A stretch of 64,000 nt of DNA from Haliotis cracherodii (taxonomy: Eukaryota). The notes under the pieces were generated by a model. The model saw only the letters and a program-made list of their open reading frames with translations. It made no database searches and was not told where the DNA came from. Position numbers and translations under genes: made by a program. Positions within the stretch are counted from its first letter, which is position 1; every line of letters begins with the position of its first letter. This document shows positions 11,366 through 47,492 of the stretch, in pieces. The DNA is taken from assembly GCF_022045235.1 (NCBI RefSeq), contig NW_027266273.1:3472001-3536000 (forward strand), read 5' to 3'.

Positions 11366-11541
11366 ACTTCCTTGTTAACACAGGATGTATAAATGTAACT
11401 AAACAAGTAACCTACCAGTGGCTCCTCTCTCCGGGTCGGTTAGGCAAGGGACGCATGGTATCTATCGAGTGATTTACAAGACTACGTCTACAAACAGTCT
11501 TATGTGACACCAATGTTATCTTCAACACACATGATGTAAAC
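11366..11541 (+). promoter_or_regulatory. Putative promoter and first exon of cassette A
   Basis: ACTTCCT (ETS-like) at 11366, tataaat at ~11388, donor gtgagt at 11542; homologous to 38842-39042. Confidence 0.5.
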
Positions 11542-12591: not shown

Positions 12592-13703
12592 ATGCCATGC
12601 AAGTGTAGTACCTGCAAGAAGGTTGTTGACCTGTACAAAAAATCACAGAAGAAGGTGCCAAATCTGTTCTGTGATCATATTGACATTTGCGATTTAAAAG
12701 GTAAAAGGAAATATAAAGAGCAAAAGAAAACAAAATTGAGACAAATCGAGATCAAGTTGTCTGCATCATTATTCTTCATGTCAGCGGGACGGCATGTGGT
12801 GACCGTTTCTTGGGATGTGTGGATGAGTTTCTGGAAGAAAGTTTGAACAATTTCATATGTGATGGAACCTTGTTTGTAGATACATACAAACGGAAATGGC
12901 TGTGTGAAATAAATACGTTTGAGAAATTCACAGACTGCATCCTAATATCGGTTGAGAAAACCAAAGGTGTTGCTACTGTAGATTTCAAAACTAAAGTTTG
13001 CTCGGATTTAAAGGTCGAAAGACCATCAACGCTTAACATCGTGTCTCTCTTGTCTCACGGGAAAAGGTCCTCCAAAAAGGCTGCGGAATTAAGAGGCTTG
13101 CAATCAACTCCACACGAAAGTCGAAACATCCAACTCAAAGCATATAGACCCAAAGAACAAGACAAAAGCGCCATTGAGAGTAATCCAGATACATTTGCCA
13201 AATATATTTGGGAAAAACTTCGATTCCGAGAATATCTCAGTTGTATGACAAAAAATGAAGAAGGGGGATCCTTTTATCTAGGAATTACCGAAAAAGAAAC
13301 AAAATATACAAACACATCACCGGACAGCTCATTCACTTACAGTAGTTGTGTTCCAGATATCGAAGGATTTGTGTTGAACTTTAGTGAAGATGCTTTGAAG
13401 AAAAGTCTTATGTGTTTGATTCAATCTCATGTCACGATACTATATGTTGACACATCTATTGAAGACATTTCACCAGATCTTGTAAAATTTCAGTTCTATA
13501 GTTTGGGAAATAGCACTCCTGAAGGCAACAGGTTTGTCCTTGAGATTGCAGTTGGTTACACGGGCGGGATAGTGTTCTATGACAAAGAAGGTCCCCTGGC
13601 GTATCACGTTAATGGAGGGGATGTTGAAAGAATCACCCCATATGATTGGTTGTGCAGAGTAACAAAAACATTTGATGATCTGAAATGCGATTCCTCTCCA
13701 TAG
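12592..13703 (+). pseudogene. SLFN-like: Schlafen-like gene copy A, frameshifted
   Basis: ORF-track pieces 12448..12846 and 12810..13703 together match the intact paralogs. A 22-bp deletion (ctcagaaacacagcaggtggca, relative to copy B) between 12765 and 12766 removes the LRNTAGG motif and shifts the frame. Acceptor tttttctttcag ends at 12585; ATG at 12592. Confidence 0.85.
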
Positions 13704-13828
13704 TAAGCAAGAACCTTTTGAACACATGTCAGTGCCCTTTTTTGACGGTATCATAATTTCTTTGGACACCGGCTCATTACCGCACACATTCTTCATACAT
13801 TTATATTTTGATCAGAAATAATATGAAA

Positions 13829-16241
13829 ATGACATCCAGTTCCGATGCCAATCGTTCGAGTGTTTCAGATGGCACTTTAGACAACCTTCATAAAGGAATG
13901 TCTTGTGCCTATCATAAACAAAGTGACGCTAGCAGTGACAGCCATGCTGAAACATCTGTGTCCGGTGATTATAGTGATGAATCGTCCACTTTACGGAGAT
14001 GCAGACGCAGAACAGATCAAATCCCAGGTGAGATGTCTCCTTCCTTTTCTTGTTATATGTGGTGGAATGGGGTTTAACGTCGCGTCCAAGATTATTGCAC
14101 TTATATAGCGACATGCATGTACGTATGTGTGTTTGTGTGGCTGCTTGTACTAGTCCGGAATGATGCCGATTGATAGTGCTAGCCCACTGAGATACCATGC
14201 CGCAGTTTAACATAAATACCCCACTCAGACACAGTATACTGACTCCTAGCCGACCAGTCCTTGTTTTAGCCCCTTAATGCAGAGCGCCAGACAGGGCAAC
14301 AACAAGTACCATCTTTTAACGTCTTTTAGTATGACGCGGCCGGGGATCGAACCCCGGACCTTCCGCTCTCCGGGCGGACGCTCTACCATTAGACCACGGA
14401 GGCGGTCTTTTTCTTGTTATAAGAAATAGACTACATAGTATATAGTAAATAGTGCCTGAAATAGCTTTCATTATCTTTTCAACACTGATTACATGCATGT
14501 CACATTCACGAGCATTTCACCTGTATTTAACCTATATTGGTTTGTTAAATCTCCACTGTTAACTTCTAATGTTGACGTTTAAAAAAAAGTTTATTTTCCC
14601 AACATCAAGATTCAGGGATACGAAATGTGGGGGTAAATGGGGTGGATTCTGTGTAGGTGTGTCATTTATAAGTGTGCCCTGGTCACTGTAGACTATGTGC
14701 ACGTGTTTATCGCCCAACGAAGGTGGCGGGGGATATAGAAACGGGCTCCGTCCGTCCGTCCGGCCGTCCGTCACGTTTCGTTTCCGGAGCATAACTCATA
14801 AACCGATTAATATTTTTTCATGAAACTCTGCAGGTCTGTCAGGTACATGCTGAACTGGTGCATTTTGTTATTTAGAAATTTTAGACATTTTTATTTTTTA
14901 CGTTTCCATGGCAACAAAATGGACTTAGGTTCTGTGAGGGTAGGGTTTGTTTCCGGAGCATAACTCATAAACCGTTCAATATTTTTTCATCAAGCTTTGC
15001 AGGTCTATCAGGGATATGCTGACCTGGTGCCTTTTGCTATTGAGACATTTAAGAAATATTTATTTTTTACGTTTCCATGGCCACAAGATGGACTGAGGTT
15101 CCAAACTCATCTTTTTTTTACACTTTCCATGACAAGTTCCACCTCGGTTAGAAAAGGTTAGGGTTTGTTTAGAGTAATTATGTCATAAATTCTGAAACAG
15201 GGGCGGGGTATATAGCCACGTTAGTGGCAAACTCTTGTTTTCATTTACAAAAAATACTTCATCGCTAATCTCTGTTACCCAGATGAAGTAACTGTTGATG
15301 AGCATCAGCCGCTACCTTCCAGTAATTATCAGAAGGATTTGCCAATAGACATTATGATGAACATTCAAAAACAACAAGGTGAGACTAAATGAAAATGAGA
15401 AGGGAAGATGCTTGATAATGAAGTAAAACGAGAGGGTGATTGAAAGAGTATCCTTTGCTTGGTGTAAAGAGTGAGCGAGTATGGTTTTACGCCGCTTTTA
15501 GCAAGATCACGGCGGAGTAAATTTTGGCATGTCTTTGATTTAGTAATAATATTATGTTGCATGTCGAAGACATATTGCATATTTCTATTCAGTTGGTAGA
15601 GTGGGCACGTCTAAGCTTAAGACGCCGGGATTTGCTGTGCAGATTTGCGTCCCTTGGGCACGCCAGAAACCTATGATTGTGGGTTCGAATCCCGCTTCGC
15701 CAGGATTATGTTTCTAGGTTTGTGAGCACCATACCCGTGTTCGTGGGTTTCACCGAAGTGGTAAACGTCTGAGACCTGCATCACTTCGGGATATCTTCCC
15801 ACATTAAGCTGACACGTCGTGATATAACTGGAATGCTGTTAAAAGCGGCGTTAAACCCAACTCACTCACTCAGTTGGCAGAAAGTATTAAATGTGTGTTG
15901 GTAATGCCAGGTAACATTCTATTCAACATGTTTGACCATACGCTCGTACATTGCGCATGATGAATGAATAAGATCATTGTACACTCATACACCTGTACAT
16001 ATACAGATCCCAAGTTTATGTGTTAATGTAGGACGTGGTTCTGTCCATGTCATCATTTTCATTTAATTTCTTCGACATTCTTTCTACGGACATTTAACGA
16101 GACGAAGGAAAGCATAGAGAAAGCATGAAATGTTTATTAAATAATACACATTCATTTCTATGTACGTTGAGACCGCCTCCGTGGTCTAGTGGTAGCGTTC
16201 GGCATTTAGGGGCTAAAACAAGGACAGGTCAGCTCGGAGTC

Positions 16242-21957: not shown

Positions 21958-24900
21958 TTAAAGACTTGTGATCACAATGTCTGCATCTGGTTTAAATACC
22001 CATGATTCCGAATTGGGTGTTTGAGTTTCCACTGAAAAGTTGGTTTGTGTACCAGCTGTACTCAGAGGACGAACCTGCAACAGTGGAAGTAAACTACTCA
22101 ACTTTTGATAAGGATACTGGGATACTTTATTCTTCTATAGTACATATAATGATTAATGACATAATAAATGGGGTAAATCAAGAAAATAATAAAAAATACC
22201 CCTATCAAAAGGTGAGTAGTATAATATAAACAAAACCTAGCAAGCTCTATCCTGACTGTGTTTACTCTAGACTTTGATGCTTCAAACACAATCTCATTAA
22301 AATCAAATCTAAGTTCTCGCTGCCGCTAAACAAAGATCTGAGGACATCCCATTTCGGACATCCCATTACGGGTCACGTCAGAACGACCTTTCGCAAACTT
22401 TGACCGCCAACTGAAACGAGTAACAAGAAGTCGACATCAGCCAATTAGAAAGCAGCTTTCTCGAGCTTTACGGCACTCGTTTCAACCTGGCGACTTCCAT
22501 TTCAGACTACGCTTGAAAAATATGTTGACACAGTTCTGGATTAAAATTTTGAAAACAGAACAAACGAACATTCCAGAATATCTAATATATGGTTGATTGT
22601 ATGACAGTGCTTCCCACATACTGTGCAGCGCCTCCTCCGTTCAAATGTTTATCCCACGGAAGCGGGGGGTAATTTTGACGGAATCAGTCGTACGGGCCGA
22701 AACTGTCGTCCGGGATACCCCGTGTAAACGTTTTCGAGGTTGCATGATTAGAAAACACATTCAGACTGTCACTTTCATGATCTGGTAAGCGACGCTTTGA
22801 TTGGCCGGATGAAAGGTCTTCAGCATCCCATGCTTGCCCTAAAAGGCGACTATGCTTGTCGTAAGAGGCGACTAACGGGATCGGGTGGTCAGGCTCGCCG
22901 ACTTGGTTGATGGATGTCATCGATCCCAATTGCGTGGATCGATGCTTATGGTGTCAATCACTTGATTGTCTGGTCCAGACTCGAATATTTACAGACCGCC
23001 GTCACATAGCTGGAATATTGCTGAGTGCGGCGTTAAATCACAACAACAAAAATAAAACATTTACAGGTCCCATTGTAAGCATAGATCTGTAATTAACGGC
23101 AGCGTGGAAAAACACTCCCTCAATCACTGACAACTATAACCATGGAATCATACTCACTGCATACTGGGCACGTCTCTGGTACGGTTCATAGTTCAGCGCC
23201 ATTACGTCACCATCACCACCGCTACCTACACAGAATATCCCCACGGGGTGTTAAGACAAGGTCCACTATACTGGAGTTTACCGCCCGCAATGTGTATACA
23301 CACACATACACACACCAAAGAAAATTGTGCTGCGAGTCCAATAGAATCCAAAGATCTATTCTGAAAGCGAATCTCATTAAAATCAGATCTTAGTTCTCGC
23401 CAAACAAAGATCTGAGGACATCCCATTACGGGTCACGTCAGACCGACCAATGGAATGACTAACAATAGTCAATCAGAAGGCAGCTTAATCGAGCTTAAAG
23501 GGGCTAATTTTAAACTGGCGACTACGCTTCGAAACATATTTTGACGTATGATCGATTACAAAATGAAAAAAAAGAAGAAAAAAGAACATTAAGGAATGGC
23601 TAATAGATGGTCTAGATTGTATGAATACAGACATAAAGCCCATAACTGTTGTCCGGAATACACTGTGGTATTTTTCGAGGTTGCGCGATAAAAACATCAT
23701 GTTCCAAATGTCACTTTCATGATCTGATAAGCGATGCTGTGATTGGTCAGATGAAAGGTCGTTCTGACATGACCTGCAATGGGATGTCCTCAGATCTTTA
23801 TTAAGCGGTAGCGAGAACTAAATTCTGAATTTAATGATATTGTCCGAAAGCCAAATTAAATTTGATTACGTATTCTATTGTTATTCATACAGTCTCATGC
23901 CGCCTCAACCCCGTTTGTAACCTATACTGACGTAAATAGCCTAATCCCGGCCCTGTCCGTTGCATGTACTCACCCATGCTCAATCCCCACCAGTAGCCTA
24001 TATTGACCCAGGCAGTTTAATCCCTGTCAGTTGCCTATACTGACCCAGCCAGCTTAACCCCTGTCAGTAGCCTATACTTACCCAGTCAGTTTAATCCCTA
24101 TCAGTAGCCTATACTGACCCAGGCAGTTTAATACCGTCTGCCAGTAGCACATCCTGGATCAGGTGGACTAGTTACTCGGTGACTGCATGTCATCACAGTT
24201 ACATGGCGTTGGGGGCTTGTCTGGCTTGTCTGGGCCAATATTGTTAAACAACAAGCACACTACAAAGAAGAGGGACTTCGACCAGTGTGAACTGAATGGC
24301 GAAACCCCAAAGTGACGCAGTTTAACACTTTAGTTGGTTGGTTGGTTGGTTGGTTTGTTGTTTAACGCCGCACTCAGCAATATTCCAGCTATATGACGGC
24401 GGTCTGTAAATAATCGAGTCTGGACCAGACCATCCAGTGTGATTGATATCATGAGAATCGATCTACGCAATTGGGATCGATGACATGCATCAACCAAGTC
24501 AGCGAGCCTGACCACCCGATCCCGTTAGTCGCCTTTTACGACAAGCATAGTCACCTTTTATGGCAAGCATGGGTTGCTGAAGACCTATTCTACCCCGGAA
24601 TGTTCACGGGTATACCACTTTAGTGACCAAGGGACCAAGGGTCATAGTCGGAGCGAGTGTGGGATTCGAAACCACGAACTGCGGATCGCAACTGTTTGAA
24701 CAGCTAATTGCCTCACAAATGAAAATCACCTCTGCCAACTTGCACAAAGCGATCTTAGTGCTAAGACTATCGTAAGCCTATGTTAAAGTATGGGACTTAA
24801 GATCATCGTAGTGCTAAGATTGCTTTGTGCAAGTTGGCCCTGATCTAATAAGGGATGGCTGTCATGTGAATTAGGAAGCTCAAGTGATAAGATTTTCACG

Positions 24901-26413
24901 AAAATTTTCACTGTAGGTACCTTTCAATCTCATCAAATCTTGTTGAAGCGTCCTCTGTGTGTCTTTGATCTCCCCTATCTCCTTCAAGAGTGTGTCTGTT
25001 GAAAGAAAGAAATAACACCATAGTAATAAAACTCATTTCAAAGTAAACCTTTTGACATGGTTATCAGTCCGTTGTAAGATTCCAACTATATCATAAGCGT
25101 TGGCTCATAAATCAATATCTGTTAGTTAACATAAGTTAACATACATAGAGGAGCACCTTTATACATTAGTTTGTTGTTTAACGCCGCACTCAGCAATATT
25201 CAAACTATATGACGGCTGTCTGAAAAATAATTGCCTTGTAGTTGGCCTACAACCATTATAAGATCACCATTTCATAAATTATTTCCAAAATGCAGTGTGT
25301 CACTGATTTATGCCTCACCTTTTAATGCATCGAATTGTGTTTGCATTTGGATCTTGATTTGCTCCAACAAATATTTCTGATTACCATCCTGGGGTAGCAT
25401 CGCTTGCTCACAAATAATGTCCTCATCTTGTCAACAGAAAATAAAACCAAGTGTAAAACGAGACTTTGGAACTTGAATTGTCATAAGCGTTATACATTAT
25501 CAATTCTTACAGTGGTAGCCTGTATTTCTTCTTCTCTATTCTTACTATTATTATTATGTGCAGATTAAAATAAGAAATGCAAAAAGAGGATTTCGGTGAT
25601 CCTGGCACAGTCAGACTGGTTAGGCTCATCATCAGCTCAGGGTCCTTGCCTCCTCTACACGCAACCCAGACAGCGAATGGGACTTCTCCCAGGAAGCGCT
25701 GCCTAGTCAGACCCACCCAGAACTTTGCGGAGAATGTGAAGACTCACCAACAGTGCAACCTTCTGCATTACCAAATGTCAGTCAACAGATTGGAAGGTAC
25801 CAAACCTAAGGCACTGAGAACAATTGGGAGTCGGACAACTTGGTACTTAGGGCAAGCGTGACGTCCGCATATTTGCCATGTTTTTCATGAATCTTGTCAA
25901 TCACATTGACGTTAAAAGGGACAGAAAATTCAATAATATAAATGATTTCATCAGGTTTGTTGGCCTGGATACATATGAGGCTGTATATGGGCCTATACCA
26001 AAGACATTTGTATTGATCATTTTCCATGACGCCCTCTACATATTCTGTGTCGTACCATGGATGGACCTCTGTGTCAAAACCACAAGCATGGCGAAGACGG
26101 TAATTAGATGATTGAGCCACTCCATCATGTCGCTAAAGATACTGTGTTTGTGCCAAAGCTGGACATCCACTGACAATGTTTTGGACAATCTCATTAAATT
26201 CATTACATAATCTACATTTCATGTTTACATTATGAAGCAAAATCACACATTGACAGTTTCAATTGCCTTTTCAGGCCAGTTGACCTCATCCAAGCGAAGG
26301 ACTCTGTAGGGTTGCTGACCATCTCAACACACTGCATATACACTCAGTATATGCAGTCTTTCAGATAGCCTCTCCTTGAAAAGCCACAAGCTATTATAAT
26401 TATAATTATTATC

Positions 26414-26444
<31 letters not shown>

Positions 26445-27121
26445 TTTTGTCCTCAAAATGATTTAATATGTTCATGCATAATTATAGCAATAATTCGTCA
26501 AGCAGTTTCTGTGAACAGCTGACATCAAAGAATTGGTAGCAAAACCTGGCTGGGCTAAAATTTCAATTCCCTGAACATTTTGAGATGGATAAGGGTGAAC
26601 GTGAACAAAATCATGAACATTGCATCTTCACTAGATGTCATAAGTCAGTTCCCCGAACACAATTCTGATGCGAACGTGGCGCAATGGTGGTGCGATAGTG
26701 GTTCGAAAGCAATCCTTTAAATATTTTGTTGCTGAAATGTCGGGGATAGTTTCTCGAAAGTGTTGCCAAAATACCGCGACATTAGGCAAGTTCTGTAATG
26801 AAAGTTTCAAATGATGTAATTGCCTTTGAAACCAAATAGTCATGTATCATTCCAAATACCGGTATACCGAATGTAATGAAAGGAACCAACCCCACCTGCT
26901 TTAGGATCCGATCTGTTCGTTACTTCAACACATTCGTCGTCTACGGCATATTCAGCCTCGTATATTCTGTTGTCGAATGTTTCAGTGCGCGAGTCGCTGC
27001 TCTCTTCACATGTAGATGAGTATCTTCTACTGTATGCACAACGCATACCGGGTCCCTGATGAAGGTTGTCCAACGCATCATCTGAATAACTCGAAAGATT
27101 TCCCTCTGAACTGGACGTCAT
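21958..27121 (-). CDS. ORF2 copy B (197 aa); exons 27121-26896, 25426-25319, 24995-24921, 23225-23158, 22074-21958
   Basis: GT-AG introns, phases 1,1,1,0, open frame: MTSSSEGNLSS...DEDIICEQAMLPQ...DTLLKEIGEIKDTQ...LNYEPYQRRAQYA...VRPLSTAGTQTNFSVETQT...DIVITSL*. Confidence 0.85.
22289..22819. mobile_element. Second copy of the same MITE, right TIR truncated at a SINE junction
   Basis: Homologous to 23369-23760; ends at aggtc, where a family-4 SINE begins. Confidence 0.7.
23369..23842. mobile_element. MITE with ~80-bp TIRs and 9-bp TSD (Mutator-like)
   Basis: TIRs aatctcattaaa...gaggacatcccatt / aatgggatgtcctc...tttaatgatattg. TSD tctgaaagc (23360-23368) / tccgaaagc (23843-23851). The paralog has an empty site tctgacagc at ~52571. 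Confidence 0.8.
24735..24842. mobile_element. Short palindromic MITE (~110 bp); further copies at ~29766-29877 and ~59625-59700
   Basis: Near-perfect hairpin gccaacttgcacaaagcgatcttag...ctaagattgctttgtgcaagttggc with GGCC-type ends. Confidence 0.65.
25545..26400 (-). mobile_element. 5'-truncated R4/Dong-like non-LTR retrotransposon (RLE domain) in ORF2-B intron 1
   Basis: Minus strand reads IVSGCPALAQTQYL*RHDGVA (zinc-knuckle/RHD region), then ENDQYKCLW...NKPD...IIEFSVP...EKHGKY (restriction-like endonuclease). Flanked by TAA/TTA triplet repeats. Confidence 0.75.
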
Positions 27122-27317
27122 TTTGATATACAAGGTTAGTGCACCAACACCTTACCAATACAAGAATGCGTTAATATGTTCCAGTATTGATGAGGCTAAA
27201 ATGACCCCAAATGAAACTGGTGTATGGGTGTCCTTAGTGTATTCCCAAGATGAGGAAAGGGACAGTGACACCCGTTTCAAGGTCCTTGATAGCGACGGAG
27301 ATGAATCTCAAATGAGA

Positions 27318-28415
27318 TCAATAAATTTCTTTTACTTTGCGCAACCAATCTTCACGGGTTATTCTTTTAATGTCCCCATTTTCTGTAATATGATAAGCTT
27401 CTGGGCCTTGTTTGTGATAGAACACTATCCCTTCCGTGTAGCCAACTGCAATCTCAAGGACGCACCTTCTGCTCTCTGTCTTCACTGGATAAAAGTGGAA
27501 TTTTACAAGGTCTGAAGAAATATCTCCAAAAGATTTACCGGAATCTAGTTTGATTACATGAGATTTAATTAGACATTTGAGACTGTTCTCAAGTTCACGT
27601 TTTCCACATTTTAACTCAAATCCTTCAATATCTGGAACCACACTACTGTAAGTGCGTGAGCCGTCCGTTGATGTCTTGTACTCTCTATTTGTTTCAGCAA
27701 TTCCTAAATAGAAGGAGCCCCCTTCGTCATTATTTGTCATACAACTGAGATATTCTCGAAATCGAAGTTTTTCCCAAATATATTTGGCAATTGTATCTGG
27801 GTGACTTTCAATGGCGCTTTTGTCTTGTTTTTCGGGTCTATATGCTTTGAGTTGGATGTTTCGACTTTCGTGTGGAGTTGGTTGCAAGCCTCTTAATTCC
27901 GCAGCCTTTTTGGAGGACGCTTTTTTTCGAGACAAGAGAGACACGATGTTAAGCGTTGATGGTCTTTCGACCTGTAAATCCGAGCAAACTTTAGTTTTGA
28001 AATCTACAGTAGCAACACCCTTGGTTTTCTCAACCGATATTAGGATGCAATCTGTGAATTTCTCAAACGTGCTTATTTCACACAGCCATTTCCGTTTGTA
28101 TGTATCTACAAACAAGGTTCCATCACATATGAAATTGTTCAAACTTTTTTCCAGAAACTCATCCACGCATCCCAAGAAACGGTCACCACATGCCGTCCCG
28201 CTGACATGAAGAATAATGATGCCACCTGCTGTGTTTCTGAGTGCAGACAACTTGATCTCGATTTGTCTCAATTTTATTTTCTTTTGCTCTTTATATTTCC
28301 TTTTACCTTTTAAATCGCAAATGTCAATATGATCACTGAACAGATTTGGCACCTTCTTCTGTGATTTTTTGTACAGGTCAACAACCTTCTTGCAGGTACT
28401 ACAATGCCATGACAT
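27318..28415 (-). CDS. SLFN-like: Schlafen-like (AlbA_2 core) protein copy B, 365 aa, intact, single coding exon
   Basis: Schlafen-core motifs SALRNTAGGIIILH (cf. CALLNSGGGVI), HESRNIQLK (cf. ESxxxEFK), YLSCMTNNDEGGSFYLGI (cf. YVSAFANTxGGYLFIGV) and GIVF...PEAY. Acceptor ttgtgtttcag lies 6 nt before the ATG at 28415. No helicase extension. Confidence 0.85.
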   Translation of the reverse strand: MSWHCSTCKKVVDLYKKSQKKVPNLFSDHIDICDLKGKRKYKEQKKIKLRQIEIKLSALRNTAGGIIILHVSGTACGDRFLGCVDEFLEKSLNNFICDGTLFVDTYKRKWLCEISTFEKFTDCILISVEKTKGVATVDFKTKVCSDLQVERPSTLNIVSLLSRKKASSKKAAELRGLQPTPHESRNIQLKAYRPEKQDKSAIESHPDTIAKYIWEKLRFREYLSCMTNNDEGGSFYLGIAETNREYKTSTDGSRTYSSVVPDIEGFELKCGKRELENSLKCLIKSHVIKLDSGKSFGDISSDLVKFHFYPVKTESRRCVLEIAVGYTEGIVFYHKQGPEAYHITENGDIKRITREDWLRKVKEIY

Positions 28416-30319
28416 TCCTGTCTGAAACACAATAAGTTAAATAGAGTTTCAAAGCCACACGTCCTACAGTTACCAGCTAAACATTGATAGACTAGATATG
28501 TATGTTGTTTCCCCGAAACTATACAAGTGATACAGTTTCTGTTCGTTCGTTTTCGTTTTGACGGTCAGGAACGAGAGTTTCATTGTCAGTGACAGGTTTA
28601 AATGACAGCGATGGAGGATTGCCAAGACTCCGACTGAGGGGGACAAAGGTTACAGTGGCCACGCGGTAAATTTAATGTCACCAAAGTGAGGGGAAAACAA
28701 TGAGACAAATTTTAAAATGCTGAAGGTTTTAAATGTTTGGAGACAATTTGTCCACATGTGTATGTTCATGGGAAAATAATTTAAACCATTTCTACCATAG
28801 GAAAGGCTACAATATGTCCCGAACACTTGCTTTCAATGTGCACGTAGTTGAATCAAATGGGGTTCGTTTTTTGTTGTTGTTTAACGTCACACTCAGCAAT
28901 ATTCAAGCGACATGTATATGACGGCGGTCTGTTTGTTTGTTTGTTGTTTAACGTCGCACTCAGCAATATTCCAGCTTTATGACGGCGGTCTGTAAATGAT
29001 CGAGTCTGGACCAGACAATCTTGCTTAATTGGTTGATGTATGTCATCGTATCCCAATTGCGTAGATCGATGCTCATGATGTCAATCCGTGGATCGCCAAG
29101 TCCAGACTCGGTTATTTGCTAGAATTTTGCTGAGTCAACAATAAATCATAAATCATCCCAAATAGCAACCATCTGTCTTCTAATGTTATCCGGAACTACT
29201 TATTATATGCGTGACTTCAAAACGACCCTCTGGTGAAATTATGACAACAAACCCAACTCAGTAACATGTTTTAAATGAATTATATATGCAGGACATGACA
29301 CATTTAACACTACCTCATAACAATATGAAGAGCGTGCGACACATTGTGTAATCGAATCTTCAAAAACTTGATAACATGTACTATAGAACCGCGTGAACAA
29401 AGATCAAGGTACAACGGGTCGACAGGTATAATATAATGGAACTCTTAGTGTGTAGATGTTGTTTGTTGTTTAACGCCGAACTCCAACTCTCTTCAAGCTA
29501 TATGACGGCTGTCTGTAAATATTAGAGTCAATCCAGACCATCCAGTGATTGGCATAATGAGCATCGATCCACGCAATTGGGATACGATGACATGCATCAA
29601 CCAGGTCAGCGAGCCTGACCATCCGATCCCGTTAGTCGCCTATTACGACAAGCCTTTTATGGCAAGCATGGGTTGCTGAAGACCCATTCGAATTCTTACC
29701 CCGGTCTTCACTTATCCAGTGTATGGATGGTGACACAGCTGCCAATGTAACTAATTCTTACCATTCAGGACCCAATTGCACAAAGCCATGTTAGCGCTAA
29801 GATTATCGTAAGCCTATGTTAAAGTATGGGACTTACGATCATCTTCGCTCTAAGATCGCTTTGTGCAAGTGGGCCAAGGTTTATAAGATAAACACGGACG
29901 TGTAATAAATGTTTTCAGCAACGAAAGTTGACGTAAATAACGTGTTAATGCTATACGTTATCATACATGCACAGTGTGCTTGTTTGTTTAATTGTTTGGT
30001 AATTTGTTGTCTAACGCCGCAATATTCCAGCTATATGACGGCGATGTCGACCAGACAATTCAGTGATTGAAATCATTGGAATCGATCCAAGCAAATGAGA
30101 TACCATCATCAGAAAAGTCTACAATGTGTGGGGTCAATTCCCGGTGTCCAACGCGTGATATTTCTGTATAATATACCACGTTTGGTTCCGGGTTAGAATA
30201 GGCCCCCAGCAACCTATGCTGGTCGCACGAGGTTACGCACTGTAACGGTGGTCAGACTCGGTGACTTGATAGATTGCGCGCCATCTCACCCTAACTGTGT
30301 GGATCCTTACTCATAATAA

Positions 30320-31479: not shown

Positions 31480-31660
31480 CTCGTCATCGGATTCTTGAGT
31501 ATTGTGCATGCACACACTAGGGTCACGACAACGAATTATCCTGCACACGGCTAGTGAACGTGACAAACTGTTGATATCAAATTGATATCGTTATCGACAC
31601 AGACCTTCCTGGACTGACATGCCTACGTGTGTCAAACGTATAATCGATAAACCAGGAAGT
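31480..31660 (-). promoter_or_regulatory. Putative promoter and first exon of cassette B
   Basis: ACTTCCT on the minus strand at 31660-31654; donor gag|gtatgt at 31479; homologous to 60168-60340. Confidence 0.45.
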
Positions 31661-38841: not shown

Positions 38842-39042
38842 ACTTCCTTGTTTCAAATAGCATGTACATGTACACCTGTAACTTAAGAGATAAGCTGAGT
38901 GATCTTCCCGCGGCTGGTAGACATGACAGCTCTTATTTCGTCAGTGAGACAAGGGAAACATGATATCAACTGAGTGATTTACATGTTGGCCAACAGTGTC
39001 TTTTGTGACACCAATACTTACTTCCACACACACGATGCAAAC
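38842..39042 (+). promoter_or_regulatory. Putative promoter and first exon of cassette C
   Basis: ACTTCCT at 38842; donor gtgagt at 39043; homologous to the copy A region. Confidence 0.5.
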
Positions 39043-39221
39043 GTGAGTATGCTTGTCAACGATACATAGTTTACATAGGAAAGAATATTGAACCAAATAG
39101 CATATTCTTCATAAGGTAAACAAGTCGTTATAACGTTCATCCATATTCATTTTTCCTCAAAATACAAGCAAAATGGTAAATTGACATGTAAATGTAATTT
39201 TTACAATGGAGGGATAAGTCA

Positions 39222-39425
39222 NNNNNNNNNNNNNNNNNNNNNNNNNNNNNNNNNNNNNNNNNNNNNNNNNNNNNNNNNNNNNNNNNNNNNNNNNNNNNNN
39301 NNNNNNNNNNNNNNNNNNNNNNNNNNNNNNNNNNNNNNNNNNNNNNNNNNNNNNNNNNNNNNNNNNNNNNNNNNNNNNNNNNNNNNNNNNNNNNNNNNNN
39401 NNNNNNNNNNNNNNNNNNNNNNNNN
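39222..39425. other. Assembly gap (N run)
   Basis: 204 N bases. Confidence 1.
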
Positions 39426-40928
39426 CAAAAAGAAACGTCCCCCCAAGTAACATTGCATGAAAAGTTGTCATTTAAATATCTGCGTAATTTTTGCCAAAGT
39501 TTCTAAAATTAAACATTACCTTGTCCGGAAAAATTTGATTTAATGATAAAAAACAAAGCAGATGACAATAAAACCGATCGCCCAAACGCATCATGGCAAC
39601 GGCCATGGTACCCCGGTGCACGTGAGTTCCGTTCAAATTGAAATGCACATGCGTTCCCCCATTTCTTGCCCTATAAAAATCAACCCAGATCGGATAACAT
39701 TCATTCGCTATTGAATTGCTACCACATGCCAAGCCCTTGGACGATTAGAAGCTGGACAAACTGCCCGGCAAGTAGCCAATGCATTTCAAGTCCGCGTAAG
39801 GACCATATACAGGCTACAGCAATGGTACCAGACCACCAACACAACAGAAGCCCGATCACATGGTGGAAGACCAAGGGTCACCACCTGACGTCAGGATCGT
39901 CAGATTGTGCGACAGCATCTTCAAGATCGCTTTGTTACTGCTGCTGAAACTGTTCGACAGACCATGGGGAAACACCAGCGACACATTAGTGCGGACACCG
40001 TACGTCGACGATTGACGAGCAGACACCTCTACTGTCACAGGCCACACCGAGGACCCATTCTGAAACCACGTCATCGACGGGACCGTCTTTAGTGTGCAAC
40101 AAAGCACCAGCATTGGCGCCACCAGCAGTGTAGAAGAGTCCTCTTCTCAGACGAGAGTTGTTACTGCATCTCAACAGCAGATGGCAGAGAGAGAGAGTCT
40201 GGCGACGCCGTGGGAAATATTATCCGGATGCTTGCGTTGTTGAGGGAGACTCGTGGGGTGGTCCGAGCATCATGGTGTGGGGTGGAATTGGTCCTGTACA
40301 GAGGGTCTGTCCTGTGGTCTTACAGAACATCGGTCCTGGGAGGGGCAATGGTGTCACAGCAGCTCGGTACATTGATCAAGCCTTAAGACCAAAGGCCATA
40401 CCTCATTTGGCACGTCGCCGCAACCACGAGTTTCAACATGATAACGCCCGTGCCCCCACTGTGAGAGCAACAAGAGAATTCCTCCAGCAGAATGGCATCA
40501 GAACCATGCAGTGACCTGCCCTCAGTCCCGATTTGAATCCCATTGAGCACCTGTGGGACGAGATTCAAAGACGGCTGAATGACATCCGACCAAGACCGAC
40601 AACTGCAGATGAACTGCGTCAGGCGTTCCTCAGAGTGTGGGCTCAAGTGCCTATGTCCTTCATCAACCGCCTCATCCATTCCATATATCGACGTTGCACG
40701 GCAGTCATCAATGCACATGGCGCACACATGAGATACTGACTTGTGATGCCATTTTCTCAGAGACTGGTGTTGTGTTTCACTTTAAGAACATTTGACACTT
40801 TAATTTAAACCTTGATCAGTTTTGCCAAGTTTCATCTTTTTGATATGTCTCAAAGTATGTTCACAGTGTTTGGACAAATAAGGTTTCTCATATATCTATC
40901 CATGACGTTTCTTTTGCGGTTGAGTATA
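39426..40928 (+). mobile_element. Tc1/mariner DNA transposon with disrupted transposase, in putative intron 1 of cassette C
   Basis: Tc1-type motifs TVRRRL, SIMVWGGI, FQHDNAR and SPDLNPIEHLWD across broken frames. The TIR fragment caaaaagaaacgtc (39426) pairs with gacgtttcttttgc (~40904-40917). The left end lies in the N gap. Confidence 0.9.
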
Positions 40929-41172
40929 TGTATGTCTGTGCATATATGTGTGTGTATGTTTGTGTACGCATGTGTGTATACACTGTAGGTGTGTGTACAT
41001 GTACATGTTTGTGTGTAGATTGGTGGGAAGGTAGGTGTGTATGTATATATGTTTGTATGCTTGTGTACGCATGTGTTTATGTGTTTGTGTATGTGTTTAT
41101 GTATGTGGGGTAGGCAGATAGGCAGGTGTCTGTATGTGTGTATATATGTGAGTGCATGTATGTGTAGATACA
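40928..41172. repeat. Degenerate (TG)/(TATG) microsatellite
   Basis: Low-complexity TG-rich run next to the Tc1 right end. Confidence 0.85.
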
Positions 41173-41778
41173 CGTAGTTATCAAGGTTATAATTGTGTAC
41201 AAACTACTTACATGTTTATATTGTAAAACAACGTCGTGATCTTTTGCATGTGAAATATGTAATGTGCTTTGATCATCTAAAGGAAATCAACGTAAGGCAT
41301 GGTCTGTCAAGGGAAAGTGGAAGTAAATAATATTGTAGATGGCAATCTTAGTGTATAGACAGGTGTTTTTGAAGAAACTGGTTGACCCACATGTTGAAAC
41401 TAACAACATTATCGACTACCCTTAGTGTGTGACGACTCATGGGTAACGGGTGGCCTAGTCGTCTATAGTGTCGTAATGTGATAATGAAAGTATCAGAACC
41501 CGCTGATCAGGGTTTACTTCTTTATTTCTTATGTAAACAACCATTGGTTTATATAGAATGCGTTTTGTGAGGACACATGCTCACATACATGCATGGAATG
41601 AAACGTTAAAACAGTGTACGTTTTCTTAACATTTCTTTTCCACTTGCATGGTACTCAAATTCCAAAAGTTTTGCATTGTGTATCAAATAGCATCAAATCT
41701 GAAAGACATGAACTATATTTACAAAGATACCTGTATTCACAATTTGAACAAATAAACACTTTTTTCTTTCAGAAAAGA

Positions 41779-42921
41779 ATGTCATGCGAATGCAGTACCT
41801 GCAAGGAGGTTAAAGGCCTTTACATAGAATCACAGAAAAAAGTGCCAAATCTGTTCGTTGAACACATTGACATAGACGATTTGAAGGGGAAAAGGAAACG
41901 TAAAGATAAAAAGAAAATAAAACTGAGACAAATCGAGATCAAGTTGTCCGCACTGCGAAACACAGCAGGTGGCAACATCATTCTTCATGTCAGCGGGACG
42001 GCATGTGGTGACCGTTTCTTGGGATGCGTTGATGAGTTTCTAGAAGAAAGTTTGAACAATTTCATATGTGATGGAACCTTGTTTGTAGATACATACAAAC
42101 GGAAATGGCTGTGTGAAATAAGTACGTTTGAGAAATTCACAGACTGCATCCTAATATCGGTTGAGAAAACCAAAGGTGTTGCTACTGTAGATTTCAAAAC
42201 TAAAGTTTGCTCGGATTTAAAGGTCGAAAGACCATCAACGCTTAACATCGTGTCTCTCTTGTCTCACAGAAAAGCGTCCTCCGAAAAAGGTGCGGAATTA
42301 AGGGGCTTGCAACCAACTCCACACGAAAGTCGAAACATCCAACTCAAAGCATATAGACCAAAAAAACAAGACAAAAGCGCCATTGAAAGTCACCCAGATA
42401 CAATTGCCAAATATATTTGGGAAAAACTTCGATTCCGAGAATATCTCAGTTGTATGACAAAAAATGAAGAAGGGGGATCCTTTTATCTAGGAATTACCGA
42501 AAAAGAAACAAAATATACAAACACATCACCGGACAGCTCATTCACTTACAGTAGTTGTGTTCCAGATATCGAAGGATTTGTGTTGAACTTTAGCCAAGAT
42601 GACTTAAAGAATAGTCTCATGTGTTTGATTCAATCTCATGTTACGATACTACAGGCAGATGTGGATACAGTTTTTAAGGACATTTCACCAGATCTTGTAA
42701 AATTTCGGTTTTATAATTGGGGAAAAAGTACTCCTGAAGGCAACAGGTTTGTCCTTGAGATTGCAGTTGGTTACACGGGCGGGATAGTGTTTTATGACAA
42801 AGAAGGTCCCCTGGCGTATCACGTTAAAGGAGGGGAGGTTGAAAGAATCACCCCAGATGATTGGTTCCGCAGAGTAACAAACACATTTGATGATCTTAAA
42901 TGCGATTCATCTCAACATTAA
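41779..42921 (+). CDS. SLFN-like: Schlafen-like (AlbA_2 core) protein copy C, 380 aa, intact, single coding exon
   Basis: Same Schlafen motifs as copy B. The start is placed at ATG 41779, 6 nt after acceptor tttttctttcag (ends 41772), matching the paralogs; the ORF-track start at 41614 is intronic. Confidence 0.87.
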   Translation: MSCECSTCKEVKGLYIESQKKVPNLFVEHIDIDDLKGKRKRKDKKKIKLRQIEIKLSALRNTAGGNIILHVSGTACGDRFLGCVDEFLEESLNNFICDGTLFVDTYKRKWLCEISTFEKFTDCILISVEKTKGVATVDFKTKVCSDLKVERPSTLNIVSLLSHRKASSEKGAELRGLQPTPHESRNIQLKAYRPKKQDKSAIESHPDTIAKYIWEKLRFREYLSCMTKNEEGGSFYLGITEKETKYTNTSPDSSFTYSSCVPDIEGFVLNFSQDDLKNSLMCLIQSHVTILQADVDTVFKDISPDLVKFRFYNWGKSTPEGNRFVLEIAVGYTGGIVFYDKEGPLAYHVKGGEVERITPDDWFRRVTNTFDDLKCDSSQH

Positions 42922-43058
42922 GCAAGAATCCTATTAACACGTATCAGTGGCCCGTTTCCTCTACGTGAAAACATTAGGTAGCTTAATGTCTATGGACATC
43001 GCCTCATTACTGCATAATCTAACCTTACGTACCTGTTTTGATCAGAAATAATATCAAA

Positions 43059-46000
43059 ATGACATCCAGTTCCGATGCGAATCGTTCGAGTGTTTCAGAT
43101 GGCACTTTAGACAACCTTCATATAGGAATGTCTTGTGCTTATCATAAACAAAGTGACGCTAGCAGTGACAGCCATGCTGAAGCATATGACAACGCAGAAT
43201 CGACCACCGTACGCATAAGCAGAACAGATCAAGTCCCAGGTGAGATGCTTCCTTTCATTGTTTGTGATAAATATTGCCGTAAATATTTCGTGATCACTTC
43301 AAAACTGGATTCTTACATGTAACAGCCACCTATGCATTTAGCATGTATTGGTCAGTAGAATCAAATTGTGTCCATGTGACGTTTAATGTTAATGTCTAAT
43401 GTTAACGCCAGTACGAGAGTACTGTGTTTGATTAAACACTCAAGACACCATCCTGTATTATCAGTTCAAACAAGGTGTCTCCAATTGACCAGATGTGTCG
43501 AAACTGTTCTTGTCATACGTCAGCCTTTGTTATCAAAGTTTCACATTAATTATTGACGTTTTTAGTCAAAACCTTTATAAGCACAGAGAAGATGTTTACA
43601 AAGATTTCTATTGAAGTCAGCTTCTTCGTATTAGTTTGTTTGGTTGTTTGTTACGGCGACTGAAGATCTATTCTACTTTATATTAATATGTGAGTGAGTG
43701 AGTGAGTTGGGTTTAACGCCGCTTTTAACAGTATTCCAGTGATATCTAGGCGTGTCAGCTTAATGTGGGAGGAAAGCCCGAAGTCATGCAGGCCTCAGAC
43801 GTTTACCACTTCGGTGAAACCCACGAGCACGGATATGGTGCTGACTAACCTAGAAACATAATCGGATTCGAACCCACAATCATAGGTTTCTGGCGTGCCC
43901 AAGGGACGCAACTCTGCACAGCGAATCGCGGCGCCTTAGACGACTGGGCCACCCGTGCCCCCATATTAATATGTATATGTACATGTTTCAGGGTAGCGTC
44001 TCATTACTATATATTTTTTATGTATATATACATAAAGTTTCAGAGTAGGTTCTTATTACTTTATATTTTTTATGTATATATACATAACGTTTTCCAGTTA
44101 TAACAGTATTCCAGTTATATCTAGGCGTGTCAGCTTAATGTGGGAGGAAAGCCCGAAGTCATGCAGGCCTCAGACGTTTACCACTTCGGTGAAACCCACG
44201 AGCACGGGTATGGTGCTGACTAACCTAGAAACATAATCGGGGCGAACCGGGATTCGAACCCACAATCATAGGTTTTTGGCGTGCCCAAGGGACGCAACTC
44301 TGCACAGCGAATCGCGGCGCCTTAGGCGACTGGGCCACCCGTGCCCCCATATTAATATGTATATGTACATGTTTCAGGGTAGCGTCTCATTACTATATAT
44401 TTTTTATGTATATATACATAACGTTTCAGAGTAGGTTCTTATTACTTTATATTTTTTATGTGTATATACATAACGTTTCAGAGTAGGTTCTCATTTCTTT
44501 ATATCAGTATATGCACACAGCGCTTCAGAGTAACGACTTATTCATTCATCATGCCTATCCACACTACAGACGTTGACAGACGTTGACATCCATAAAACAT
44601 GATTCTTATGGCACAAATAAGATATTGTTTCAATAAAGTATATTTTCCCAACATCAAAATTCAGGATAAATGTGAGGGTAAATGGGGTAGATTCTGTGTG
44701 TCATGTATAAGTGTGCATTGGTCGCTGGAGACTATGTGTTGTTTATTTTCATTTATAAAAATACTCCAACGCTAATCTCTGTTACCCAGATGAAGTACCT
44801 GAGGATGAGCATCAGCCGCTACCTTCCAGTAATTATCAGAAGGATTTGTCAATAGACATTATGATGAACATTCAAAAACAACAAGGTGAGACAAAATGAG
44901 GAGAAAATAGAAACATGATAAAGGTTGAAATAATAAGAACATTTGTTTGACAAGGAAATGAATATCAGAGTGATTCAAAGAGTAAGATTCGCTGAGTGTA
45001 AAACATTAAGGATGAGCATAAGGGATATTGGGATTTTGTTGAATATTTCGCTAAGAATATTATTTTCACCCTGATTGCTCAAATTACGCGTAGTTCATTG
45101 TTTTCATTGCTTTAAAAGTGACCAAACCCAAGTTTATTGTCGAATACAATAATCATTGAAGATGACGTACATGTGTGAAAAGAATAGCGGCGGCGTCATA
45201 GCGCGAGACTGACTTAGTAGTGTTATTGTGGCACATGTTTGAAGTAGTCATATTATTATTATGTTATGTGGCGAAGAGAAACAAATTATTTCCATTCAGT
45301 TGGCAGGTTTGTTCGTTTGTTTGTTTGTTTGTTTAACGCCGCACTCAGCAATATTCCAGCAACATGACGGAGATCAGTGAAAAAATCGAATCTGAATCAG
45401 ACAATCTTGTGATGGAGCATCGATCCACGCAAAATTAAATATATGTGTTGGTGCTGCCAGGTAAAGTTGTGTTCAACATCAATGACCATACACTGCGCAT
45501 GATGAATGAATGAGAACATTGAACACCCATACACCTGTAAATAGACAGTTCCAGAGTATATGTGTTAATATAGGCAAAATATGGTTTTATCCATGTCATC
45601 CTCGTCATATTCATTGATTTCCTTTTTGTAAACATGACATTCTTCTTATGGACATTCAACGAGATGAATGAAAGCATAGAAAGAGAGAGCATGCACTTTT
45701 CATTCAATTATACATGTGCACCTCTATGTATGTTAACATGTGTTGATAAATATGTCATGTGGTTTATTTTGAAAATAAGTATAATTGTTACCATGGTGTC
45801 ATTCCCTGTTTGACAGACACAATACTGAAGGAGATAAGGGAGATCAAAGACACACAGAAGGAGATTCAACGAGATTTGGTGAGATTGAAAGGTAAAGGTA
45901 GTCTCGTTAAAGTCTTGTCATCTGATGCCCATGTTACTCCCCAATACACAGCACATCCATAGTTTATCGAGTGGTTGTACTTTGTGCGGACAGTATGACA

Positions 46001-47492
46001 CGGTGGTCTGAGGTACCGGGATTCTCTGTGCCAGTAGTTGCTATCCTCGAGTCGTGGTTTCAAATCCCACATCCCACATGACCCGTGAAGATCCGGGGTG
46101 GAATAGGTCCTCAGCAACCCATGCTTGCCGTAAAAGGTGACTACGCTTGTCGTAAGAGACGACTAACGGGATCGGGTGGTCAGACTCGCTGACTTGGTTG
46201 ATTCATGTCATCGATCCCAGTTGCTTGGATCGATGCTCATGATATCAATCACTGGATTGTCTGGTCCAGACTCGATTATTTACAGACCGCCGTCATATAG
46301 CTGGACAATTGCTGAGTGCGGAGTTAAACAACCAGCCAACCAAATCCCACATTTGCTACGGTTATGTTCTCATTGGTTGCACCAACGTAGTAAACCTACA
46401 AGGGCTGTACCATGACCATACAGTCTCATCATGTTTCGTGCTTGTATTTTGTGCAAACAGTGTGACACGGTGCTCTGACGTACTGGAATTACAAGTACAG
46501 ATAATGCGATCTGCTTGTCGTGGCTTCGAATCCCACATGCGCTCCGATTATTATCCTTGGTCAAAGTACCGTACCGTGTCAACATAGTCTCATCATGTTC
46601 TTCAAGCAGGTTTTCTTTACGTAAATGTATAAAGCACAACATTCAGTGATGGACATGATAGGAAGTTTGGCTATCTGTCTTCATTTCAGGCCGCAGTTGT
46701 TATGGTGACACCAATGTAACGGGTCTTAACTATGAAAGACGTGCCCGATATTCAGTGAGTATGATCCAATATATTTCCCATAAGAGTTTGATTCTGACCA
46801 TGATTAAGAAAATAACGTTGACTAAGCCAAGCCGAATACGCCTAAAGTAAAAGAACTCTGTCTCACTTAGACATTTGTGATGTAATCGAATTCATCATTC
46901 ACACCATATTAGTACATTCGTATGCACATATTTTATATGTTATTCATGTCATGAACTTACATGTATATTTTGTTCGATACAAATACCAAGTAGGCAGCTT
47001 GCGAAAGACCGTGGATGAACAAGTACTATTTCAAAGATGAGTGAGTGAGTGAATGAGTTGGGTTGAACGCCGCTTTTAACAGTATGCCAGTTATATCTAG
47101 GCGTGTCAGCTTAATGTGGAAGGAAAGCCTGAAGTGATGCAGGTCTCAGACGTTTACCACTTTTGTGAAACCCACGTGCACGGGTATGTTGCTGACAAAC
47201 CTAGAAACATAATCGGGGCGAACCGGGATTCGAACCCACAATCAGAGGTTTCTGGCGTGCCCAAGGGACGCAACTCTGCACAGCGAATCGCGGCGCCTAA
47301 GACGACTGGGCCACCCGTGCCCCCTATTTCAAAGATGAAGTTCCACGTAGATCTTATATTGGCTACCATCTGTTGCAGGTCCGTCCCCCGAGCACAGTAT
47401 GTACACAAACGACAACTGAAATTCAAGAAACGCCATTTTCGGGATCATTGTCAGAAGAATCAAATGGAGATGTTTTCATTACCAAACTTTAA
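43059..47492 (+). CDS. ORF2 copy C (176 aa); exons 43059-43239, 44790-44885, 45817-45891, 46690-46754, 47379-47492
   Basis: GT-AG introns, same phases and same lengths for exons 2-5 (96, 75, 65, 114 nt) as copy A; ends VRPPSTVCTQT...DVFITKL*. Confidence 0.85.
47038..47324 (-). mobile_element. SINE family 2 in ORF2-C intron 4
   Basis: Full-length copy with TSD tatttcaaagatga; absent from copy A. Confidence 0.85.

What the first reader, a model, noticed from the sequence alone, without database searches (positions are those of the whole stretch)
39035..43061. Alternative 3' splice-site switch: the exon-1 ATG is in frame with ORF2 but out of frame with Schlafen
Seen: all four putative first exons have an ATG exactly 8 nt before the donor (11534, 31487, 39035, 60175), and all four Schlafen acceptors lie 6 nt before the Schlafen ATG. 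In C, splicing to the second acceptor (branch-like ctaac ~43019-43023, ttttgatcag ending 43045) gives ATG CAA ACA AAT AAT ATC AAA ATG ACA, in frame with ORF2. In B, splicing to tccag (ends 27111, branch cactaac 27141-27135) gives MTSSEGN, in frame with ORF2. Splicing to the Schlafen acceptor instead makes that ATG an out-of-frame uORF overlapping the Schlafen start (20 codons in C, 39 in B). Inference: the Schlafen behaves like an ORF captured in intron 1 of a host gene and is translationally damped.
Basis: partly seen in the sequence, partly recalled or inferred. Interest (0 to 1): 0.75.

Follow-up and report, generated by a model that had tools for sequence, protein, structure and literature searches.

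The report
Abalone Schlafen gene with downstream partner
Four copies of an abalone immune-type (Schlafen) gene each carry a small second gene just behind it, and the two probably share one transcription unit, but the proposed splice switch that would choose between them has no support so far.

Summary
All four units have an ATG 8 nt before a GT donor and an AG acceptor 6 nt before the Schlafen ATG. In B and C that ATG is out of frame with Schlafen (39 and 20 codons) and in frame with ORF2 through the named distal AGs.

- In A and D the ATG is followed at once by a stop.
- B and C have an earlier exon-1 ATG in frame with Schlafen, and RefSeq models of B read exon 1 in that frame.
- None of 16 ORF2-type RefSeq proteins starts as the switch predicts. 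B-type ones keep the residue that the proposed inner acceptor would remove, and H. rubra models read straight through both proposed acceptors.
- The Schlafen-like core has 112 matches genome-wide, often with an upstream exon, whereas ORF2 exists only in this cluster. Schlafen was therefore not captured by a host gene.

One point favours coupling: H. rufescens RefSeq files the Schlafen and ORF2 as isoforms of one gene.

The assembly gap lies inside intron 1.

This scan had already noted two-ORF Schlafen modules elsewhere in this genome.

The parts
38940..39042 (+). Unit C exon 1. The 5' end is unknown; 38940 is where similarity to unit A starts.
39222..39425 (.). Assembly gap (N run) inside intron 1 of unit C. 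It was not filled or looked up.
39580..40740 (+). Decayed Tc1/mariner-type transposon remnant in intron 1. RefSeq model P0001 uses pieces of it (39860-40000, 40527-40649) as coding exons.
41773..43239 (+). Proposed single long exon of unit C. It begins after the acceptor cag that ends at 41772. It holds the Schlafen-like ORF 41779-42921, a 137-nt spacer, and the first 181 nt of ORF2 (ATG 43059). It ends at the donor gtgaga at 43240.
44790..47492 (+). ORF2-C downstream coding exons, mapped from RefSeq protein P0012, with limits good to a few nt: about 44790-44885, 45816-45896, 46690-46757, and 47379-47492 including the stop.
31480..31581 (-). Unit B exon 1 as used by RefSeq model P0009. The donor GTATGT starts at 31479.
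26896..28421 (-). Unit B long exon: Schlafen-like ORF 28415-27318, a 196-nt spacer, and the ORF2-B first coding part 27121-26896.
21961..25427 (-). ORF2-B downstream exons, mapped from RefSeq protein P0022: 25427-25320, 24996-24916, 23226-23155, and a last exon ending near 21961.
11435..11541 (+). Unit A exon 1. The -8 ATG at 11534 is followed at once by TAA. No ATG in the Schlafen frame follows the last in-frame stop.
12586..14028 (+). Unit A long exon. The Schlafen copy is broken by a deletion of about 22 nt near 12765, which shifts the frame. A spacer follows, then the ORF2-A first coding part (RefSeq P0006 starts at 13823).
60168..60266 (-). Unit D exon 1. The -8 ATG at 60175 is followed at once by TAG.
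55778..57199 (-). Unit D long exon. The Schlafen copy is heavily decayed (11 stops in the best match). A spacer follows, then the intact ORF2-D first coding part 56015-55779 (RefSeq P0017).

Best explanation
The window is from black abalone: it encodes RefSeq Haliotis cracherodii proteins at 100% identity. It holds four copies, two on each strand, of one transcription unit.

Exon 1 is the unit's own 5' exon. It is spliced to an acceptor 6 nt before the ATG of a core-only Schlafen-like ORF. I infer that this second exon does not stop after the Schlafen stop codon. It runs on through a spacer of 119-196 nt into the first coding part of a small abalone-only protein (ORF2, 176-202 aa, no known domain). 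The ORF2 introns follow.

Schlafen is translated either from its own ATG or from an earlier in-frame ATG in exon 1. ORF2 is translated from its own ATG, either on shorter transcripts or, less efficiently, on the two-ORF RNA.

The ATG 8 nt before the donor is at most a minor out-of-frame start. It is not the start of ORF2.

Shown: the geometry, the frames, the family-wide layout and what RefSeq models contain. Inferred: the single long exon and how ORF2 is translated.
For: - Exon 1 to Schlafen junction: RefSeq P0009 (H. cracherodii) maps at 100% to 31581-31480 and then 28421-27321 in one frame. H. rufescens P0002 does the same and has a start codon.
- Earlier in-frame ATGs: C 38983 (402 codons open) and B 31509 (377 codons open).
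- Family layout: there are 112 core matches in the genome. 15 of 30 fetched loci have no in-frame ATG before the CxxC motif and so need an upstream coding exon. 17 of 30 have a pyrimidine-rich AG there.
- ORF2 gave 12 exon matches, all inside this window.
- A second ORF follows the core in 26 of 30 loci. Its start is rich in Ser, Thr, Asp and Glu in 15 of those 26, against 4 of 33 control ORFs. Spacers are as short as 10-20 nt, which leaves no room for a promoter or an intron.
- One gene: H. rufescens LOC124140522 has X1 as the Schlafen and X2/X3 as ORF2.
- ORF2 N-termini among the 16 proteins: 11 start MTSSS, 1 starts MKMTSSS, and 3 are extended upstream. For two of those three, one of each H. 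rubra type, I mapped the N-terminus: the extension is continuous genomic sequence across the proposed acceptor sites.
- There is no AATAAA or ATTAAA between the Schlafen stop and the ORF2 donor in A, B or C.
Against:
- RefSeq models are computed. P0009 is marked partial and may have been carried over from H. rufescens by homology.
- Filing two ORFs under one gene could come from read-through models.
- The poly(A)-signal argument is weak, because no signal was found within 700 nt after the ORF2 stop either.
- ORF2 is intact in all four units although Schlafen is dead in A and D. A two-ORF RNA with a decayed first ORF would translate ORF2 poorly, which favours a transcript that lacks the Schlafen part.
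- The -8 ATG is kept in both exon-1 types even though they no longer align. This hints at some constraint.
Confidence: 0.5

Rival explanations
1. Exon 1 is shared and is spliced either to the Schlafen acceptor or to a distal acceptor at ORF2. The -8 ATG then opens ORF2 in one isoform and acts as an overlapping out-of-frame uORF that lowers Schlafen translation in the other.
For: - The frames are as stated in B and C.
- A and C share the ttttgatcag site with a ctaac upstream, and the same 10 letters sit before the partner ATG at locus L009.
- H. rufescens files the Schlafen and ORF2 as isoforms of one gene.
- ORF2 stays intact where Schlafen is dead, which suits an isoform that skips the Schlafen part.
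- The ATG at -8 is kept in two exon-1 types that no longer align.
- A known precedent exists in the cholinergic gene locus.
Against: - 0 of 16 ORF2-type RefSeq proteins carry the predicted start.
- B/D-type proteins start MTSSS, so the inner acceptor at 27111 is not used in those models. H. rubra models read through both sites.
- In A and D a stop follows the ATG directly.
- The distal sites have weaker pyrimidine tracts (0.65 in C, 0.47 in B) than the Schlafen acceptors (0.71-0.76).
- Only 3 of 20 family loci have any pyrimidine-rich AG near the partner ATG.
- An in-frame result is expected for one AG in three.
Confidence: 0.15
2. Two separate genes. ORF2 has its own promoter in the 3' part of the Schlafen exon or in the spacer. 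The Schlafen mRNA ends before or within ORF2 exon 1. The filing under one gene in RefSeq is a read-through artefact.
For: - Three of the four H. rufescens ORF2 genes are filed as their own loci: LOC124140521, LOC124140523 and LOC124140524.
- H. cracherodii RefSeq gives separate proteins for the Schlafen and ORF2 of unit C.
- ORF2 survives where Schlafen decays.
- H. rubra models start inside the spacer or the Schlafen remnant.
Against: - The spacer is only 119-196 nt here and 10-20 nt at some family loci.
- There is no canonical poly(A) signal between the two ORFs in A, B or C.
- LOC124140522 joins both ORFs under one gene.
Confidence: 0.3

Closest known systems
Cholinergic gene locus (VAChT ORF inside the first intron of ChAT)
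   Same: A single-exon ORF lies between a 5' exon and the coding exons of a second gene on the same strand. Several promoters and alternative splicing yield the two mRNAs (passages of PMC3053374).
   Different: Here the upstream exon and acceptor belong to the Schlafen family's own layout. The second gene starts 119-196 nt after the first ORF's stop, with no proven acceptor. No junction from exon 1 to ORF2 is supported.
Short (core-only) Schlafen proteins of vertebrates, such as mouse group I members (named from recall)
   Same: It is a protein of about 370 aa that consists only of the two-lobed Schlafen core. A profile of 22 abalone paralogues hits only SLFN11, SLFN14, SLFN12, Schlafen 8 and SLFN5 chains at E of 0.083 or better, 11 of the 12 hits listed.
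   Different: The Pfam score is just under the cut-off (25.1 against 25.3 bits in B, 18.3 in C). The N-terminus has a CxxC motif. The second acidic residue of the presumed catalytic set is Gln in this clade. The family is hugely expanded, with 112 matches.
Two-ORF ('split') Schlafen modules noted earlier by this scan in the same genome (s1-823188, s1-831969, s1-831993)
   Same: A core ORF is followed closely on the same strand by a second ORF with a Ser- and acid-rich start. I saw this in 15-26 of 30 loci.
   Different: The partner here is a small orphan protein with a coiled-coil-like stretch and no linker or sensor domain. It exists only in this four-copy cluster.
Overlapping upstream ORFs as translational dampers
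   Same: In B and C an upstream out-of-frame ATG would overlap the main start, if the junction is used.
   Different: Its length is not conserved (20, 39, 1 and 1 codons). It is not the first ATG of the exon in B and C. No ribosome or reporter data exist.

Membership tests
Schlafen core (Pfam SLFN_AlbA_2, PF04326) | Pfam model matched at or above the gathering score | tested here: inconclusive
   B scores 25.1 bits and its RefSeq model P0009 scores 24.8, against a cut-off of 25.3. C scores 18.3. Only profile positions 1-48 of 118 are matched.
Schlafen core (Pfam SLFN_AlbA_2, PF04326) | Sequence-profile similarity to solved Schlafen cores in both lobes | tested here: met
   The profile of 22 paralogues gave 12 hits at E of 1 or better, and 11 of them are Schlafen chains. 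The best is SLFN11 (7fex) at E 2.7e-07, matched in both the N-lobe and the C-lobe. A single sequence gave 0 hits.
Schlafen core (Pfam SLFN_AlbA_2, PF04326) | Three acidic catalytic residues of the RNase site (residue roles recalled, not taken from a call) | tested here: inconclusive
   Column E183 is invariant (22 of 22). The second position is Glu in 12 and Gln in 10 of 22; the unit B and C copies, the only two of this window in the alignment, have Gln. E241 is present in 21 of 22.
Schlafen core (Pfam SLFN_AlbA_2, PF04326) | Horseshoe two-lobe fold | not tested
   No structure was predicted.
Nested gene with shared 5' exon and alternative 3' splice sites (cholinergic-locus type) | A single-exon ORF placed between a 5' exon and the second gene's coding exons, on the same strand | tested here: met
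   This holds in all four units.
Nested gene with shared 5' exon and alternative 3' splice sites (cholinergic-locus type) | The same 5' exon is joined to either ORF in mature RNA | not testable with these tools
RefSeq proteins show the exon 1 to Schlafen junction only. None of 16 ORF2 proteins shows an exon-1-derived start.
Nested gene with shared 5' exon and alternative 3' splice sites (cholinergic-locus type) | Both products annotated under one gene | tested here: met
   H. rufescens LOC124140522 has X1 (Schlafen, 400 aa) and X2/X3 (ORF2, 211 and 197 aa). This is annotation, not an experiment.
Regulatory overlapping uORF | The uORF is conserved among copies | tested here: not met
   It is 20 codons in C, 39 in B, and 1 each in A and D.
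Regulatory overlapping uORF | Its ATG is met first by scanning ribosomes | tested here: inconclusive
   Earlier ATGs lie in the last 120 nt of exon 1 (C 38923, 38960 and 38983; B 31509). The transcript start is unknown.
Two-ORF Schlafen module (this scan's earlier notes) | The core ORF is followed within about 220 nt by a second ORF on the same strand | tested here: met
   4 of 4 units here. 26 of 30 loci genome-wide, against controls of 13 of 30 and 20 of 30. The Ser- and acid-rich start is seen in 15 of 26, against 4 of 33 controls.
Two-ORF Schlafen module (this scan's earlier notes) | Both ORFs lie on one mature RNA | not testable with these tools
   There were no reads. It is only inferred from the RefSeq filing and from H. 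rubra models that run through the spacer.

The most novel reading that the evidence does not exclude
One short leader exon carries two start codons in two frames. The earlier one is matched to the Schlafen core through the proximal acceptor. The one 8 nt before the donor is matched to the small partner protein through a distal acceptor. A splice-site choice would then set the ratio of an RNA-cutting immune effector to its partner from a single promoter.
Probability: 0.12. Interest if true: 0.65.

Novelty: new variant of a known kind. Interest (0 to 1): 0.4.

Why it matters
Schlafen proteins are antiviral and stress effectors, and little is known about how they are controlled outside vertebrates. 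If abalone Schlafen cores are routinely expressed together with a second protein from one transcription unit, the partner is a candidate regulator or co-factor. This cluster would be a useful case, because the partner has outlived the Schlafen in two of four copies. The specific claim of a splice switch with a dual-use start codon would be a neat mechanism, but the annotated proteins of four abalone species do not back it. Corrected this way, the locus is mainly an annotation and gene-structure result. It comes with a cheap decisive test: read the exon tables of three RefSeq mRNAs, or count junctions in RNA-seq.

Tried and rejected
- RNA evidence. The look-up of sequencing runs listed 24 runs, none on record as RNA.
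- Conservation of exon 1 as a sign of use in the units with dead Schlafen (A and D). I rejected this argument. B and D exon 1 align at 68.6%, no better than the B-D intron pieces at 66-76%.
- Poly(A) signals as a test of one RNA against two. This was uninformative, because none was found after ORF2 either.
- A fusion of the Schlafen core to ORF2 through a donor near the Schlafen 3' end. I considered it by eye and dropped it, because reading into the 43046 exon in that phase meets a stop at once.
- ORF2 identity. Pfam gave only sub-threshold coiled-coil-type hits. The profile against solved structures gave nothing meaningful.
- Literature. The terms 'Schlafen' plus 'abalone' gave 2 papers, neither about this by title or start of abstract (listing only). 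'Schlafen', 'mollusc' and 'expansion' gave nothing on point (listing only). I therefore know of no printed account of this layout. Supplements were not opened.
- Spliced models. I searched exon by exon: ORF2 exon 1 alone, and the exons of B and D as separate alignment rows. I also searched with whole RefSeq proteins that the tools returned. I left out the step of joining my own exons for a search.
Full report
What the window is. The Schlafen-like ORF of the finding (41779-42918) matches a RefSeq protein of Haliotis cracherodii at 100% identity (P0001). Six further RefSeq proteins of that species map onto the window at 96-100% per exon. The window holds four units, shown by self-comparison, by the ORF list and by direct reading: A (+, about 11.4-18 kb), B (-, 31.6-21.9 kb), C (+, 38.9-47.5 kb) and D (-, 60.3-51.6 kb). 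Each unit has a short 5' exon, an intron of 1.0-3.1 kb, a large exon with a Schlafen-like ORF, and a five-exon small gene (ORF2) that starts 119-196 nt after the Schlafen stop.

The observation. An ATG sits exactly 8 nt before a GT donor in all four units, at 11534, 31487, 39035 and 60175. An AG acceptor ends 6 nt before the Schlafen ATG in all four. Through that acceptor the -8 ATG reads 20 codons in C and 39 in B, out of frame and overlapping the Schlafen start. The distal AGs, ending at 43045 in C and 27111 in B, put it in frame with ORF2.

Three things were missed.
- In A and D the ATG is followed directly by TAA or TAG.
- B and C each have an earlier ATG in exon 1 that is in frame with the Schlafen ORF through the junction. 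These are 38983 in C, open for 402 codons, and 31509 in B, open for 377.
- The proposed acceptors are not homologous. A and C have ttttgatcag 13 nt before the ORF2 ATG.

Among all AGs between the Schlafen stop and ORF2 +40 nt, 3 of 8 in C and 2 of 10 in B give an open in-frame reading. The frame match is therefore what chance gives. The four copies are two paralogue pairs, not four independent cases.

The gap. The N run 39222-39425 begins 180 nt after the donor, inside intron 1, so no reading frame crosses it. Its left flank aligns collinearly with unit A (39170-39220 to 12027-12077). Its right flank has no counterpart in A and leads into a decayed Tc1/mariner-type element. The junction of exon 1 to the Schlafen exon in C therefore rests on scaffold order alone.

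Is it a Schlafen? Pfam SLFN_AlbA_2 scores just under its cut-off (25.1 against 25.3 bits in B, 18.3 in C). A profile of 22 paralogues from this genome and one H. asinina protein gave 12 hits against solved structures, and 11 of them are Schlafen chains. The best is SLFN11 at E 2.7e-07, matched in both lobes. I accept it as a core-only Schlafen relative. In this clade the second acidic residue of the presumed catalytic set is Gln (10 of 22 rows). The role of that residue is recalled, not tested here.

Whose exon is exon 1? The Schlafen-like core has 112 matches across the genome. ORF2 has 12 exon matches, all inside this window. Of the 30 best core loci, 15 have no in-frame ATG between the upstream stop and the conserved CxxC motif, so their start codon must lie in an upstream exon. 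I left out L002, where the 'no ATG' result was an artefact of a late alignment start. 17 of the 30 show a pyrimidine-rich AG right there. An upstream exon plus an acceptor just before the core is thus the family's own layout. RefSeq agrees for unit B. P0009 (H. cracherodii, marked partial) maps to 31581-31480 and then 28421-27321 in one frame. Its H. rufescens orthologue P0002 does the same and has a start codon. The idea that a host gene captured the Schlafen in its first intron is therefore the wrong way round. ORF2 is the local newcomer, or a local variant of a partner gene.

A second ORF is a family trait. In 26 of the 30 loci an ATG-ORF of 45 codons or more starts within 224 nt after the core stop. 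ORFs that long are common by chance, as the controls show (13 of 30 and 20 of 30). But the first 40 residues are rich in Ser, Thr, Asp and Glu in 15 of the 26, against 4 of 33 control ORFs. 12 of the 26, including ORF2 of A, B and C and the two neighbouring loci L004 and L005, link up by BLASTP run without composition correction, so that evidence is weak. Some spacers are only 10-20 nt, too short for a promoter or an intron. This matches earlier unchecked notes of this scan on 'split' two-ORF Schlafen modules elsewhere in this genome. I tested the layout, not the RNA. A pyrimidine-rich AG near the partner ATG is present at only 3 of the 20 loci I examined, the ones with typical partner starts. 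A distal acceptor is therefore not a family feature.

What annotated proteins say about the switch. I searched ORF2 exon 1 alone, the RefSeq protein it found, and an alignment with the exons of B and D as separate rows. With cluster look-ups I saw 16 ORF2-type proteins from four Haliotis species.
- 11 begin MTSSS.
- 1 begins MKMTSSS.
- 1 is truncated.
- 3 H. rubra models are extended upstream.
- None begins as the switch predicts.

P0022 maps without a break from 27121. The H. rubra extensions align to continuous genomic sequence upstream of the ORF2 ATG, across both proposed acceptor sites.

One fact favours coupling. H. rufescens LOC124140522 has isoform X1 as the Schlafen and isoforms X2 and X3 as ORF2. 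From my knowledge of how RefSeq groups transcripts, this means the models share exon structure. That is an inference.

Best reading. This is one transcription unit. Exon 1 is joined to the Schlafen acceptor. I infer that the large exon continues through the spacer into ORF2 (41773-43239 in C), with the ORF2 introns after it. ORF2 uses its own ATG, on shorter transcripts or on the two-ORF RNA.

Points against my reading. The models are computed. ORF2 is intact in all four units while Schlafen is dead in A and D, which would suit a transcript without the Schlafen part. The -8 ATG survives in two exon-1 types that no longer align.

Comparison with known systems. Geometry and one-gene filing are met here. 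The defining shared-exon splicing to the second ORF could not be tested, and the proteins do not suggest it. As a uORF the -8 ATG fails conservation, with 20, 39, 1 and 1 codons. I found no printed account of abalone Schlafen gene structure (listings only).

Verdict. The locus is a real, four-fold Schlafen-plus-partner unit, a new variant of known two-ORF or nested gene layouts. It has moderate interest and a cheap decisive test.

Noticed in passing
window 35503-38583: A 27-nt satellite of about 115 copies at 92% match ends 350 nt upstream of unit C exon 1. Short related pieces lie upstream of unit A exon 1 (11239-11288 and 10811-10851).
   Followed up: partly
window 39580-40740: The RefSeq model of the unit C Schlafen (P0001, 473 aa) takes its first 88 residues from a decayed Tc1/mariner-type remnant in the intron (weak DDE_3 hit) instead of from exon 1. 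This is probably an annotation artefact next to the assembly gap.
   Followed up: partly
window 12592-13703: The unit A Schlafen copy is a mosaic. Its first 60 or so codons are like unit B and the rest like unit C, which suggests gene conversion. A deletion of about 22 nt near 12765 shifts the frame.
   Followed up: no
window, all four units: ORF2 is intact and annotated in all four units, and all four types are also annotated in H. rufescens (LOC124140521 to LOC124140524). The Schlafen is broken in A and D. The small partner outlives the Schlafen.
   Followed up: partly
window 31487-31480 and 27121-27111: In unit B the exon-1 tail and the start of ORF2 share the same six letters from the ATG on, and both end in AG. 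The spliced and unspliced starts would therefore differ by only one Ser. This is not seen in D, A or C and remains unexplained.
   Followed up: no
L009 (G000:C6:24236364-24240395): The 10 letters ttttgatcag that form the proposed distal acceptor in A and C also sit directly before the partner ATG of a paralogue that is only 38% identical and lies on another contig.
   Followed up: no
alignment A1, column of residue 188 of the unit C protein: The second acidic residue of the presumed Schlafen RNase site is Gln in 10 of 22 paralogues, including the unit B and C copies and L004/L005; the other 12 keep Glu. This clade may be a weakened or inactive nuclease.
   Followed up: partly
window 43690-44480, 47040-47330 and at least 6 other places: A repeat of about 280 nt occurs many times in the window on both strands, twice in tandem inside ORF2-C intron 1. 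It is probably a SINE-like element.
   Followed up: no
(run list): All 23 holders share 0.26-0.34 of the words across seven organism codes and 15 studies. This looks like index background, not real holders of this abalone sequence.
   Followed up: no
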